A DNA stretch of 64,000 nt from Octopus bimaculoides (taxonomy: Eukaryota). The notes below the pieces were generated by a model. It had not been told where the DNA came from. It worked only from the letters and a program-made list of their open reading frames with translations, and ran no database searches. Position 1 is the stretch's first letter; the number at the start of each line of letters is the position of its first letter. The DNA is taken from assembly GCF_001194135.2 (NCBI RefSeq), contig NC_068993.1, positions 30,269,874 through 30,333,873 of the forward strand, given 5' to 3'. Positions 31,953-33,310 of this stretch are shown here, piece by piece. Both the position numbers and the translations under genes were made by a program.

Positions 31953-33310
31953 CTTAACAATATTAATAGCAACATACAATTCACCATGGAACACAGCAGT
32001 AAACAACTCACTTTTCTTGTCATCCTAATTAAAATAGTCAATAACCACATCGAAACAGACATCTTCTATAAACCCACAGATTCTAAAAAATACCTATTAT
32101 TCAACTCATGCTACCTCAAACACATAAAAATTAATATACCCTATAATCTAGCGAAAAGAATCTGTACCATAGTTTCGGACCCCGATACTCGTGAACGAAG
32201 ACTCCTTGAACTCAGATCGATACTAATCGAAAGACATTACCNNNNNNNNNNAACGAAGACTCCTTGAACTCAGATCGATACTAATCGAAAGACATTACCC
32301 AATAACTTTAATAAATGATGAAATTAAACGAGCTAAGGAAATAGACATACGAACATTAAGAGAAGTCAACCGAAATGCTAAACCAGACTTAAAATACTCT
32401 CCACACATAACCCTAGAAACAACGAAGCCTTTAACATTATCATCTAAAATCTAGCCATCCTCAAAAGAGATAAAACAATAAACAAAATTTTAGGCTAACA
32501 CAAAATTATCAAAAGTAAAATGCAACCTAAATCATTGAAAAAATATTAACCAGCGCAAGACTGTATCCATTAACAACAGAACCAAAAGTGAAAAAATGTG
32601 GTCGACCTAACTGTGGTACTTGCCCCCACTTTTTGGAGGGTTCAGAGTGCTACTTTAAACAAGGTGAAATATTTAAGATTAAATCACATTTCACCTGTGC
32701 CTCAGAAAATCTAATGTATGCCATTACATGCTTAGGGTGTGGTAATAATTATATTGGCCAAACAGGAATATTACTCCGTAGAAGAACCACTCTCCACAAA
32801 GAACAAATCCACCACCCACAATACAGACAGGTACAGGTCAGTGGACACGCAGAAAGGTGTGCGAGGAATCTTAATCCTAATTTCCTAATTTTTCCCTTCT
32901 ATCAATGTTCACAAAACACCTCAATACAACAAAGAATGAATAAAGAGACAACTTTCATCAATAAATATCTTCTACAACTAAATATGAACACATAACATAA
33001 TATAGAACACCCCTACACATAATCTTTTTACTCAGGGACTAGTAGATCTGACATCGTTCAGTTTTCGGTGTGCATTCAAAGCAATGATTAGTAACTTTAC
33101 GAAACCGGTATGCTTTTGAATCTCTTTAACAACTCAAAATAGTGACTTTTATTACTTTTATTCCTACCTCAGTTCATCTAATTGTATATATCTATAGTTA
33201 CTTTTCATAAAAAGCCTTTACTTTTTTCGATTTCCAATGTGCATTTTCGCTTATTTTTCTTCTTTCCACGTGTAGTTTCTATTTTGTTCTTGTAACATAT
33301 TTCTATTATA
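31953..33310 (+). mobile_element. Penelope-like element (Neptune/Poseidon-type), RT thumb, GIY-YIG endonuclease and 3' pLTR
   Basis: IQFTME..IFYKPTDS..YLLFNSC..IPYNLAKRICTIVS; KKCGRPNCGTC, FTCASENLMYAITCLGCGNNYIGQT; stop at 32995. Confidence 0.9.
33074..33121 (+). ncRNA. Minimal type I hammerhead ribozyme with an A3-U8 core variant
   Basis: attcaaagca-ATGATTA-gta(actt)tac-GAAA-ccgg-TA-tgcttttgaat: stem I 10 bp with one bulge, stem II 3 bp, palindromic stem III ACCGGT, GUA site. Confidence 0.8.

What the first reader, a model, noticed from the sequence alone, without database searches (positions are those of the whole stretch)
33074..33121. Penelope 3' pLTR hammerhead with an A3-U8 swapped core pair
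About 80 nt after the GIY-YIG stop codon there is a complete minimal type I hammerhead: stem I 10 bp with one bulge, G10.1-C11.1, palindromic stem III, GUA site. The core reads AUGAUUA instead of CUGANGA. The two changes fall exactly on positions 3 and 8, which form a tertiary Watson-Crick pair in hammerheads, and they restore pairing (A-U). Random decay is unlikely to do this while sparing all stems, so this may be a functional natural variant that CUGANGA-based searches miss.
Basis: partly seen in the sequence, partly recalled or inferred. Interest (0 to 1): 0.85.

Follow-up and report, generated by a model that had tools for sequence, protein, structure and literature searches.

The report
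Penelope hammerhead with A3-U8 core pair
A dead, truncated Penelope-like retrotransposon carries a minimal hammerhead ribozyme motif whose conserved C3-G8 core pair is replaced by A-U, and related retrotransposon families share this swap, so it is an inherited natural variant (a modest extension of the known U3-A8 variant), not random decay.

Summary
Window 33074-33121 (+) is a complete minimal type I hammerhead, starting 78 nt after the GIY-YIG stop codon. It has a 10-bp stem I with one bulged U, G10.1-C11.1, GAAA, the palindrome ACCGGU and a GUA site. Its core reads AUGAUUA.

A strict descriptor finds two such motifs in the window and none in 300 simulated windows.

This copy is dead: it is 5'-truncated, has frameshifts and stops, and no other copy of its family could be retrieved. 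The swap is nevertheless inherited.
- **Sister family (L015, 66% EN identity):** a clean hammerhead with AUGACUA.
- **More basal relative (L014):** AUGAUUA, though otherwise decayed.
- **Two other close relatives:** U3-A8.
- **Outgroups:** C3-G8.

Across 14 motifs the 3-8 pair is CG 6, AU 3, UA 3, other 2. There are no clear one-sided changes; the two 'other' cells are the ambiguous L003/L004 pair.

RNAcofold predicts a double hammerhead for the dimer. Catalysis is untested.

Natural U3-A8 covariation was already published (Perreault 2011; Cervera and de la Peña 2014). I recall, but could not read, a 2007 report of engineered A3-U8 cores being active. This is therefore a new variant of a known kind and of moderate interest.

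The parts
31953..32241 (+). C-terminal fragment of the PLE reverse transcriptase. The element is 5'-truncated at an N gap preceded by a (TA)n microsatellite at 31880-31915.
   Evidence: Translation. It aligns to RT+EN proteins P0029, P0125 and P0212. P0212 carries Pfam RVT_1 and GIY-YIG.
32252..32587 (+). Decayed RT-EN linker. It has two real frameshifts, near 32440 and near 32565, and three or four in-frame stops. Positions 32252-32299 duplicate 32194-32241 across a 10-N gap, which is an assembly artefact.
   Evidence: Three-frame translation compared by eye with P0004 and P0029. Self-BLAST shows the 48-nt duplication.
32588..32995 (+). Open GIY-YIG endonuclease domain, including the CX4CxxC zinc-knuckle-like linker (KKCGRPNCGTC). 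The stop codon is 32993-32995.
   Evidence: ORF list. Pfam GIY-YIG E = 6.5e-4, 20.4 bits, below the 22.6-bit gathering score. There are 875 homologues with E <= 1e-3, many carrying RVT_1, PF26215 and GIY-YIG.
33074..33083 (+). Hammerhead stem I, 5' strand (positions 2.10-2.1).
   Evidence: It pairs with 33111-33121. Stem I forms in the predicted monomer and dimer folds.
33084..33090 (+). Core box AUGAUUA: A3 (33084), U4, G5, A6, U7, U8 (33089), A9.
   Evidence: The same A3/U8 box is found in L015 (AUGACUA) and L014 (AUGAUUA). Covariation count.
33091..33100 (+). Minimal stem II: G10.1-C11.1, U-A and A-U closing an ACUU loop.
   Evidence: It is predicted as a hairpin in both monomer and dimer folds. 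The same 'G-short loop-C' design is seen in L015, L011 and L007(-).
33101..33110 (+). G12 A13 A14, then the palindrome A15.1-CCGG-U16.1 (33104-33109), then A17. The predicted cleavage site is between 33110 and 33111.
   Evidence: GAAACCGGT is shared by almost all relatives. The palindrome forms a 6-bp intermolecular helix III in the cofold MFE.
33111..33121 (+). Hammerhead stem I, 3' strand (1.1-1.10) with U33117 bulged.
33122..33310 (+). Remainder of the 3' UTR or presumed pseudo-LTR, cut off by the N gap at 33311-33722.
   Evidence: No similarity to the relatives' 3' UTRs outside the hammerhead.

Best explanation
The motif is the minimal, helix-III-less type I hammerhead of the 3' untranslated region (presumed pseudo-LTR) of a Neptune-like Penelope-like element (PLE). 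This copy is 5'-truncated, inserted next to a (TA)n microsatellite, and has a broken reading frame.

Its core carries an A3-U8 Watson-Crick pair in place of C3-G8. The swap is a lineage trait inherited from active ancestors, not decay of this copy. The sister and a more basal PLE family carry it too, while neighbouring families carry U3-A8 or C3-G8.

Inferred mechanism, as for other PLE minimal hammerheads:
- A single motif cannot form helix III.
- Two copies, from tandem pseudo-LTRs in one transcript or from two RNAs, pair through the palindrome ACCGGU to form a 6-bp helix III. They exchange stem I strands, giving a double hammerhead.
- The A3-U8 pair would take the structural place of C3-G8 and position residue 8, whose 2'-OH acts in catalysis.
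- Cleavage would follow A17, between 33110 and 33111.

The anatomy, the non-random occurrence, the inheritance and the covariation are shown. The catalysis, the dimer requirement and any role in the element's life cycle are inferred. At this locus the motif is a relic with no compatible partner nearby.
For: - **Anatomy:** exact at the stated coordinates.
- **Chance:** the strict descriptor gave 2 hits in the window against 0 in 300 simulated windows.
- **Position:** the motif starts 78 nt after the GIY-YIG stop. Relatives carry their hammerheads roughly 70-220 nt after theirs.
- **PLE identity:** the RT C-terminus plus CX4CxxC linker plus GIY-YIG is homologous to proteins carrying RVT_1, PF26215 and GIY-YIG. 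The (TA)n target matches the reported PLE insertion bias (PMC8557442).
- **Inheritance of A3-U8:**
  - L015 reads ...ATT|ATGACTA|G CACCCG C|GAAA|CCGGT|T|AATAT.
  - L015 is 98% identical to L013/P0125, the window's nearest relative.
  - L014 has ATGATTA and a homologous outer stem I, ATTC/GAAT.
- **Covariation:** the 3-8 pair is CG 6, AU 3, UA 3, other 2, with no one-sided change to another standard pair. Stem I also covaries. No shuffle out of 500 reached the observed score.
- **Selection on the motif:** coding DNA is only 71-75% identical between the window and L015, and the 3' UTRs align nowhere except at the hammerhead.
- **Fold:** the cofold MFE of two copies (-20.5 kcal/mol) is the double hammerhead. 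The monomer (-5.9 kcal/mol) forms no helix III.
- **Literature:** C3-G8 is a Watson-Crick pair whose swap partly rescues cleavage, including in a PLE hammerhead (PMC11167929). Natural U3-A8 covariants exist (PMC3088659; PMC4209133).
Against: - No self-cleavage data exist for any A3-U8 PLE hammerhead.
- In a complete pairwise mutagenesis of a type III hammerhead, only C3G/G8C rescued activity. All other double mutants in the core, which would include C3A/G8U, were of low activity (PMC9901934).
- PLE minimal hammerheads cleave poorly in vitro (PMC4209133).
- Cleavage was dispensable for insertion of an Anolis PLE in vitro (PMC11167929).
- Only one copy per family was seen, so no family consensus was established.
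- L014 is otherwise damaged: G12 is C, and CCGG has become CCGT.
- L015's hammerhead is joined to the EN gene by a deletion and is cut by the contig end after 5 nt of stem I.
- L014 and L015 come from the same XUSH22-1 metagenome series, so the two may share a host.
- The copy in the window is dead.
Confidence: 0.75

Rival explanations
1. The fold is conserved but not catalytic. The hammerhead-shaped element would be kept for another reason, such as a protein-binding or reverse-transcription-related RNA structure, or as a parasite of the PLE. The A-U pair would then be tolerated because fast cleavage is not required.
For: - PLE minimal hammerheads have low in vitro activity.
- Hammerhead mutants did not affect insertion of the Anolis PLE in vitro, and no RNA-seq ends mapped to the cleavage site.
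- Naiad PLEs thrive without hammerheads.
- Double mutants other than G3-C8 were of low activity in deep mutagenesis.
Against: - Every catalytic residue is kept in the window and in L015: U4, G5, A6, A9, G12, A13, A14, A15.1-U16.1 and a non-G at position 17.
- The 3-8 positions change only in a compensatory way. That is the signature of selection on the folded catalytic core.
- The Anolis PLE hammerhead did cleave when its protein was present.
Confidence: 0.17
2. Random decay of a canonical C3-G8 hammerhead in this dead copy. Under this view, two independent substitutions happened to fall on positions 3 and 8.
For: - The copy is clearly decayed, with two frameshifts and three or four stops within about 330 nt.
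- Core damage does occur in relatives: G12 to C in L004 and L014, and a deletion in one L008 copy.
Against: - The same A3/U8 state occurs in two other PLE families with 53-66% EN identity.
- All other core positions and both stems are intact in the window.
- No comparison sequence unambiguously shows a one-sided intermediate.
Confidence: 0.05
3. A chance resemblance to a hammerhead in AT-rich non-coding DNA.
For: - Rfam finds nothing, even at E <= 10.
- A relaxed descriptor gives 0.4-1.4 chance hits per window.
Against: - The strict descriptor gave 0 hits in 300 simulated windows.
- The motif lies at the homologous position behind a PLE endonuclease gene.
- GAAACCGGT is shared with about a dozen relatives.
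- Rfam also misses all canonical C3-G8 minimal hammerheads of the relatives, so its silence carries no weight.
Confidence: 0.01

Closest known systems
Minimal hammerheads of Penelope-like elements (Cervera and de la Peña 2014, PMC4209133; Lünse, Weinberg and Breaker 2017, not readable here)
   Same: - Type I topology.
- Location in the region flanking the RT-EN ORF.
- No helix III, with a palindromic 15.x-16.x segment implying dimer function.
- G10.1-C11.1.
- Occurrence mostly as single motifs of truncated elements.
   Different: - The core pair is A3-U8. It is neither C3-G8 nor the reported U3-A8.
- Stem I is unusually long (10 bp, against the 4-5 bp reported).
- Stem II is very short (3 bp, against 7-8 bp).
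- There is no unpaired nucleotide between A9 and 10.1.
Natural U3-A8 hammerhead covariants (Perreault et al. 2011, PMC3088659; Schistosoma Cercyon PLE variants, PMC4209133)
   Same: - The tertiary 3-8 pair is replaced by another Watson-Crick pair.
- Found in the same kind of element.
- Two close relatives here (L010, L011) and a second motif in this window (35585-35543, minus strand) have exactly this U3-A8 core.
   Different: The orientation is reversed: purine at 3 and pyrimidine at 8. No paper in the searchable library mentions 'A3-U8' together with hammerhead.
Engineered 3-8 pair swaps (Martick and Scott 2006; Przybilski and Hammann 2007, RNA 13:1625, recalled from memory, not held; Roberts et al. 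2023, PMC9901934; Anolis PLE hammerhead, PMC11167929)
   Same: They address the same question: whether any Watson-Crick pair at 3-8 supports the active fold. G3-C8 partly rescues activity, including in a PLE hammerhead.
   Different: - Those are laboratory mutants of tertiary-stabilised or protein-assisted ribozymes, whereas this is a natural lineage.
- The published results disagree on A-U. From memory, it was tolerated in an Arabidopsis hammerhead. In deep mutagenesis it was of low activity.
Double-hammerhead (dimer) self-cleavage of newt satellite and ASBVd RNAs (Forster et al. 1988, cited in PMC4209133)
   Same: A weak or absent helix III is compensated by two copies forming an extended helix III. 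The cofold MFE here has that topology.
   Different: Here helix III is absent altogether in the monomer, and the partner copy would come from a second pseudo-LTR, not from a satellite repeat.

Membership tests
Hammerhead ribozyme (type I, minimal) | Invariant core residues U4, G5, A6, A9, G12, A13, A14, A15.1-U16.1, and a non-G at position 17 | tested here: met
   All are present at 33085-33087, 33090, 33101-33104, 33109 and 33110.
Hammerhead ribozyme (type I, minimal) | C3 and G8 (consensus CUGANGA), or a Watson-Crick pair between positions 3 and 8 | tested here: inconclusive
   The literal consensus is not met, since the positions are A3 and U8. The pairing is met. Across 14 related motifs the pair is CG 6, AU 3, UA 3, other 2, with no one-sided change to another standard pair. 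Whether A-U supports catalysis in this scaffold is untested.
Hammerhead ribozyme (type I, minimal) | Three helices around the core, with stem I open (type I) | tested here: met
   Stem I has 10 bp plus a bulge and stem II has 3 bp. Helix III forms only between two copies through ACCGGU. The cofold MFE is the double hammerhead.
Hammerhead ribozyme (type I, minimal) | Match to the Rfam hammerhead covariance models | tested here: not met
   No hit at the gathering threshold or at E <= 10. As a control, the canonical C3-G8 minimal hammerheads of 11 related loci also give no hammerhead hit. This test therefore does not discriminate for the class.
Hammerhead ribozyme (type I, minimal) | Site-specific self-cleavage giving 2',3'-cyclic phosphate and 5'-OH ends | not testable with these tools
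   This needs in vitro transcription of dimer constructs or end-specific RNA sequencing.
Penelope-like element (EN+, Neptune-like) | A single ORF with a telomerase-like RT followed by a C-terminal GIY-YIG endonuclease | tested here: met
   The window holds only the RT C-terminus plus EN, because the copy is 5'-truncated. It aligns along 329 aa to proteins that carry RVT_1, PF26215 and GIY-YIG. Pfam GIY-YIG on the window ORF is sub-threshold, at 20.4 against 22.6 bits.
Penelope-like element (EN+, Neptune-like) | A cysteine-rich (CX2-5CxxC) linker between RT and EN, characteristic of the Neptune and Nematis clades | tested here: met
   KKCGRPNCGTC is invariant across the homologues. The clade assignment rests on the description in PMC8557442, not on a phylogeny that includes reference Neptune sequences.
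Penelope-like element (EN+, Neptune-like) | Pseudo-LTRs (partial tandem or inverted copies) that carry the hammerhead | tested here: inconclusive
   There is no second copy in the window. In relatives the hammerhead is followed by the start of the next ORF (L003) or occurs in inverted copies (L002).

The most novel reading that the evidence does not exclude
A subclade of Neptune-like PLEs, probably in molluscs, has cycled its hammerhead 3-8 pair through C-G, U-A and A-U while remaining transpositionally active. On this reading the purine-3/pyrimidine-8 A-U core is a catalytically competent natural hammerhead that works as a dimer, possibly with help from the PLE protein. Consensus-based (CUGANGA) censuses of genomic hammerheads would then systematically undercount them.
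Probability: 0.5. Interest if true: 0.55.

Novelty: new variant of a known kind. Interest (0 to 1): 0.45.

Why it matters
The C3-G8 pair was the key feature revealed by the full-length hammerhead crystal structure.

- **Natural evidence on the pair:** covariation is the strongest in vivo evidence that the pair, and not the base identities, is what selection sees. So far only U3-A8 had been reported in nature. An inherited A3-U8 state adds the reversed purine/pyrimidine orientation. Laboratory data on that orientation conflict.
- **Annotation:** PLE minimal hammerheads number in the thousands per genome. Descriptors fixed on CUGANGA, or on CUGANGA plus UUGANAA, and the Rfam models will miss this class.
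- **Limit:** it does not change the picture of how hammerheads or PLEs work.

Tried and rejected
- **Rfam:** no hits at the gathering threshold or at E <= 10. The control on relatives shows that Rfam does not detect minimal PLE hammerheads at all.
- **Self-BLAST of 31401-33310 against the window:** only microsatellite hits and the 48-nt gap duplication, so no second copy of the pseudo-LTR.
- **Exact look-up of the window's EN ORF in public assemblies:** not on record.
- **Single-sequence protein search:** only 5 hits. Profile searches gave 875 and 363 hits, but none above 66% identity, so same-family copies are not in the collections.
- **Scans with the EN profile:** nothing in viral contigs or genome contigs. 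The metagenome scan gave 4 loci, all C3-G8.
- **L013 (P0125 itself):** only 173 nt of 3' flank, with no hammerhead reached.
- **Literature not available:** Przybilski and Hammann 2007 and Lünse et al. 2017 could not be read. No supplement of Cervera 2014 is held.
- **Rejected as chance:**
  - CTGATGAG...GAAAC at 1487 (+) has no stem I and lies inside a reading frame I judged, by eye only, to be integrase-like.
  - GTGAACA...GAAA at 32912 (-) lies inside the EN ORF and was found only with the relaxed descriptor, which expects 0.4-1.4 chance hits per window.
- **Considered and set aside:** DNA-pattern scans of the large collections for ATGANTA...GAAACCGGT. The expected number of random matches, tens to hundreds, would swamp any real ones.

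Full report
**Observation.** The sequence at 33074-33121 reads ATTCAAAGCA|ATGATTA|G TAACTTTA C|GAAA|CCGGT|A|TGCTTTTGAAT.
- In hammerhead numbering, A3 is 33084, U8 is 33089, G10.1 is 33091 and C11.1 is 33100.
- G12-A15.1 is 33101-33104, the palindrome A15.1-CCGG-U16.1 is 33104-33109, and A17 is 33110.
- Stem I is 10 bp (33074-33083 with 33111-33121), with U33117 bulged.
- The GIY-YIG ORF ends at 32995, so the motif starts 78 nt after the stop.
- A strict descriptor required NUGANNA with a Watson-Crick 3-8 pair, G10.1/C11.1, GAAA, a palindromic helix III, H17 and a stem I of at least 3 bp. It hit twice in the window and never in 300 Markov-simulated windows.

**Context.** The window is AT-rich (35.5% GC) draft eukaryotic DNA with 20 N gaps and many microsatellites.
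- Upstream of the motif lies a 5'-truncated PLE copy.
  - An RT C-terminal fragment starts at 31953, right after an N gap and a (TA)n run.
  - A linker follows with two frameshifts and three or four stops.
  - An open 135-aa GIY-YIG domain with a CX4CxxC motif completes it.
- A 10-N gap at 32242-32251 is flanked by a 48-nt duplication, which is an assembly artefact.
- An N gap at 33311 cuts the 3' side.
- No second copy of the region exists in the window. The 'pLTR' label is therefore inferred from relatives.
  - In L003 the hammerhead is followed about 100 nt later by the start of the next ORF.
  - In L002 two inverted copies each carry the motif.
- The cysteine linker and the (TA)n target fit the Neptune-type PLEs described in PMC8557442.
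- The nearest named homologues are Argonauta hians proteins at 46-47% identity. One hit comes from a Candidatus Thiodiazotropha MAG; that genus is known to me as clam symbionts, so it is presumably host contamination. Both hints point to a mollusc host.

**Is the A3-U8 swap decay or inheritance?** Same-family copies could not be found. Profile searches returned hundreds of relatives, but none above 66% EN identity. I therefore read the 3' flanks of the closest relatives.
- The window's sister in a neighbour-joining tree of the EN domain is the P0125 family (66% identity).
  - One copy, L013, has too short a flank.
  - A second copy, L015, is 98% identical to L013. It ends with ...ATT|ATGACTA|G CACCCG C|GAAA|CCGGT|T|AATAT.
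  - This is a clean minimal hammerhead with A3-U8, a different N7 and unrelated stems.
- The more basal P0124 family (L014) has CCATTC CAA|ATGATTA|...|CAAA|CCGTT|C|TGAATGG.
  - It has the same AUGAUUA box and a homologous outer stem I (ATTC/GAAT).
  - It is otherwise damaged: G12 is C and CCGG has become CCGT.
- The next relatives carry the published U3-A8 variant.
  - L010 reads CCC|TTGAAAA|...|GAAACCGGT|C|GGG.
  - L011 reads AAGAAAT|TTGAAAA|GCTACACGC|GAAACCGGT|A|ATTTCTT.
- L012 and all outgroups (L001, L002, L006/7, L007 minus strand, L008) have C3-G8.
- On a trimmed alignment of 14 motifs the 3-8 pair is CG 6, AU 3, UA 3, other 2.
  - There is no one-sided change to another standard pair.
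  - Stem I covaries at all six pairs.
  - No shuffle out of 500 reaches the observed covariation score, and slid controls fall to background.
- The two 'other' cells are the sister pair L003/L004, both reading C-ATGATGA.
  - The stem I of L004 (TTCT/AGAA) favours reading this as C3 plus an inserted A, with G8 kept.
- Coding DNA of the window and L015 is 71-75% identical. Their 3' UTRs align nowhere outside the hammerhead.
- The motif, including A3-U8, has therefore been maintained while everything around it diverged.
- This rejects random decay of this copy. It does not establish the consensus of the window's own family.

**Fold.** ViennaRNA gives a monomer MFE of -5.9 kcal/mol with stems I and II but no helix III. 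Two copies cofold at -20.5 kcal/mol. That structure has both stem II hairpins, a 6-bp intermolecular ACCGGU helix and stem I strands exchanged between the copies. This is the double-hammerhead topology.

**Mechanism.** By analogy with other PLE minimal hammerheads (PMC4209133), two copies pair to build helix III. The core folds with A3-U8 replacing C3-G8, and cleavage follows A17.
- These steps are inferred, not shown.
- The literature is mixed on whether A-U at 3-8 is active.
  - The pair is a genuine Watson-Crick contact, and G3-C8 partly rescues cleavage, including in a PLE hammerhead that needs its protein (PMC11167929).
  - U3-A8 occurs naturally (PMC3088659).
  - From memory, Przybilski and Hammann (2007) found that any Watson-Crick pair was tolerated in an Arabidopsis hammerhead, but that PLMVd preferred Y3-R8. 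That paper could not be read.
  - A complete pairwise mutagenesis found only G3-C8 to rescue (PMC9901934).
- At this locus the motif is a relic. The only other strict hit, 2.4 kb away on the other strand, has a different palindrome (ACUAGU) and could not pair with it.

**Comparison with what is known, and novelty.** This is a member of the PLE minimal hammerheads with a new state of a pair that is already known to covary.
- No paper in the searchable library couples 'A3-U8' with hammerhead.
- Lünse et al. 2017 and the supplements of Cervera 2014 could not be checked, so prior mention cannot be excluded.
- Rfam misses the whole class, canonical members included.
- I rate it a new variant of a known kind and of moderate interest.

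Noticed in passing
window 35543-35585 (minus strand), within 35405-35856: A second strict-descriptor minimal hammerhead: TCTGCA|TTGATAA|G GGGCAAATGCCC C|GAAA|CTAGT|C|TGTAGA. It has a U3-A8 core, a 5-bp stem II and the helix III palindrome ACUAGU. It sits in an inverted repeat about 450 bp long, with arms 35405-35559 and 35668-35856 that are about 90% complementary, flanked by (TA)n on both sides. The inverted arm starts inside the hammerhead, at C11.1. It looks like a pseudo-LTR plus an inverted 5'-truncated copy from another PLE family.
   Followed up: partly
window 56998-57043 (minus strand): A candidate canonical minimal hammerhead: GACAC|CTGATGA|A GGCTG gagggtatat CAGCC|GAAA|CGT|T|GTGTT. 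A GGTTCGAAA sequence resembling tRNA box B lies about 20 nt upstream, so it may be SINE-borne. It was found only with the relaxed descriptor, which expects 0.4-1.4 chance hits per window. ARAGORN finds no tRNA in the window.
   Followed up: partly
L003 947-990 and L004 832-872: Two sister PLE families both read C-ATGATGA in front of stem II. This is either A3 opposite G8, or C3 with an extra A inserted before U4. The stem I of L004 favours the insertion. This is a possible further natural core variant.
   Followed up: partly
L004 ~857 and L014 ~1564: G12, the general base, is C (CAAACCG...) in two unrelated elements. This could be coincident decay of single copies, or a recurrent change at the C11.1-G12 CpG-containing site. 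It is unexplained.
   Followed up: no
L001, L002, L003, L006, L008 hammerheads: Many relatives have a U after A9 and a U before G12 flanking a 3-5 bp stem II (CUGANGA-U-stem-U-GAAA), in place of the G10.1-C11.1 pair. This reads as a U-U opposition at 10.1/11.1. The window, L015, L011 and L007 (minus strand) keep G...C.
   Followed up: no
window 32194-32241 and 32252-32299: A perfect 48-nt duplication on either side of a 10-N gap inside the PLE coding region. It is almost certainly a scaffolding artefact, and it produces a spurious frame change.
   Followed up: yes
window 1144-1560 (+) and 2514-3104 (+): Other transposon remnants, judged by eye only. The first is an integrase-like reading frame containing ...SVDRLKRSY..., within which a chance CTGATGAG...GAAAC string lies. 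The second is a LINE-type reverse transcriptase fragment interrupted by an N gap.
   Followed up: no
window ~60000-60232 (+): The end of an ORF translates to ...[70 protein letters not shown]. By eye it resembles the N-terminal ligand-binding domain of a Cys-loop neurotransmitter-gated ion channel, so it is probably a host exon.
   Followed up: no
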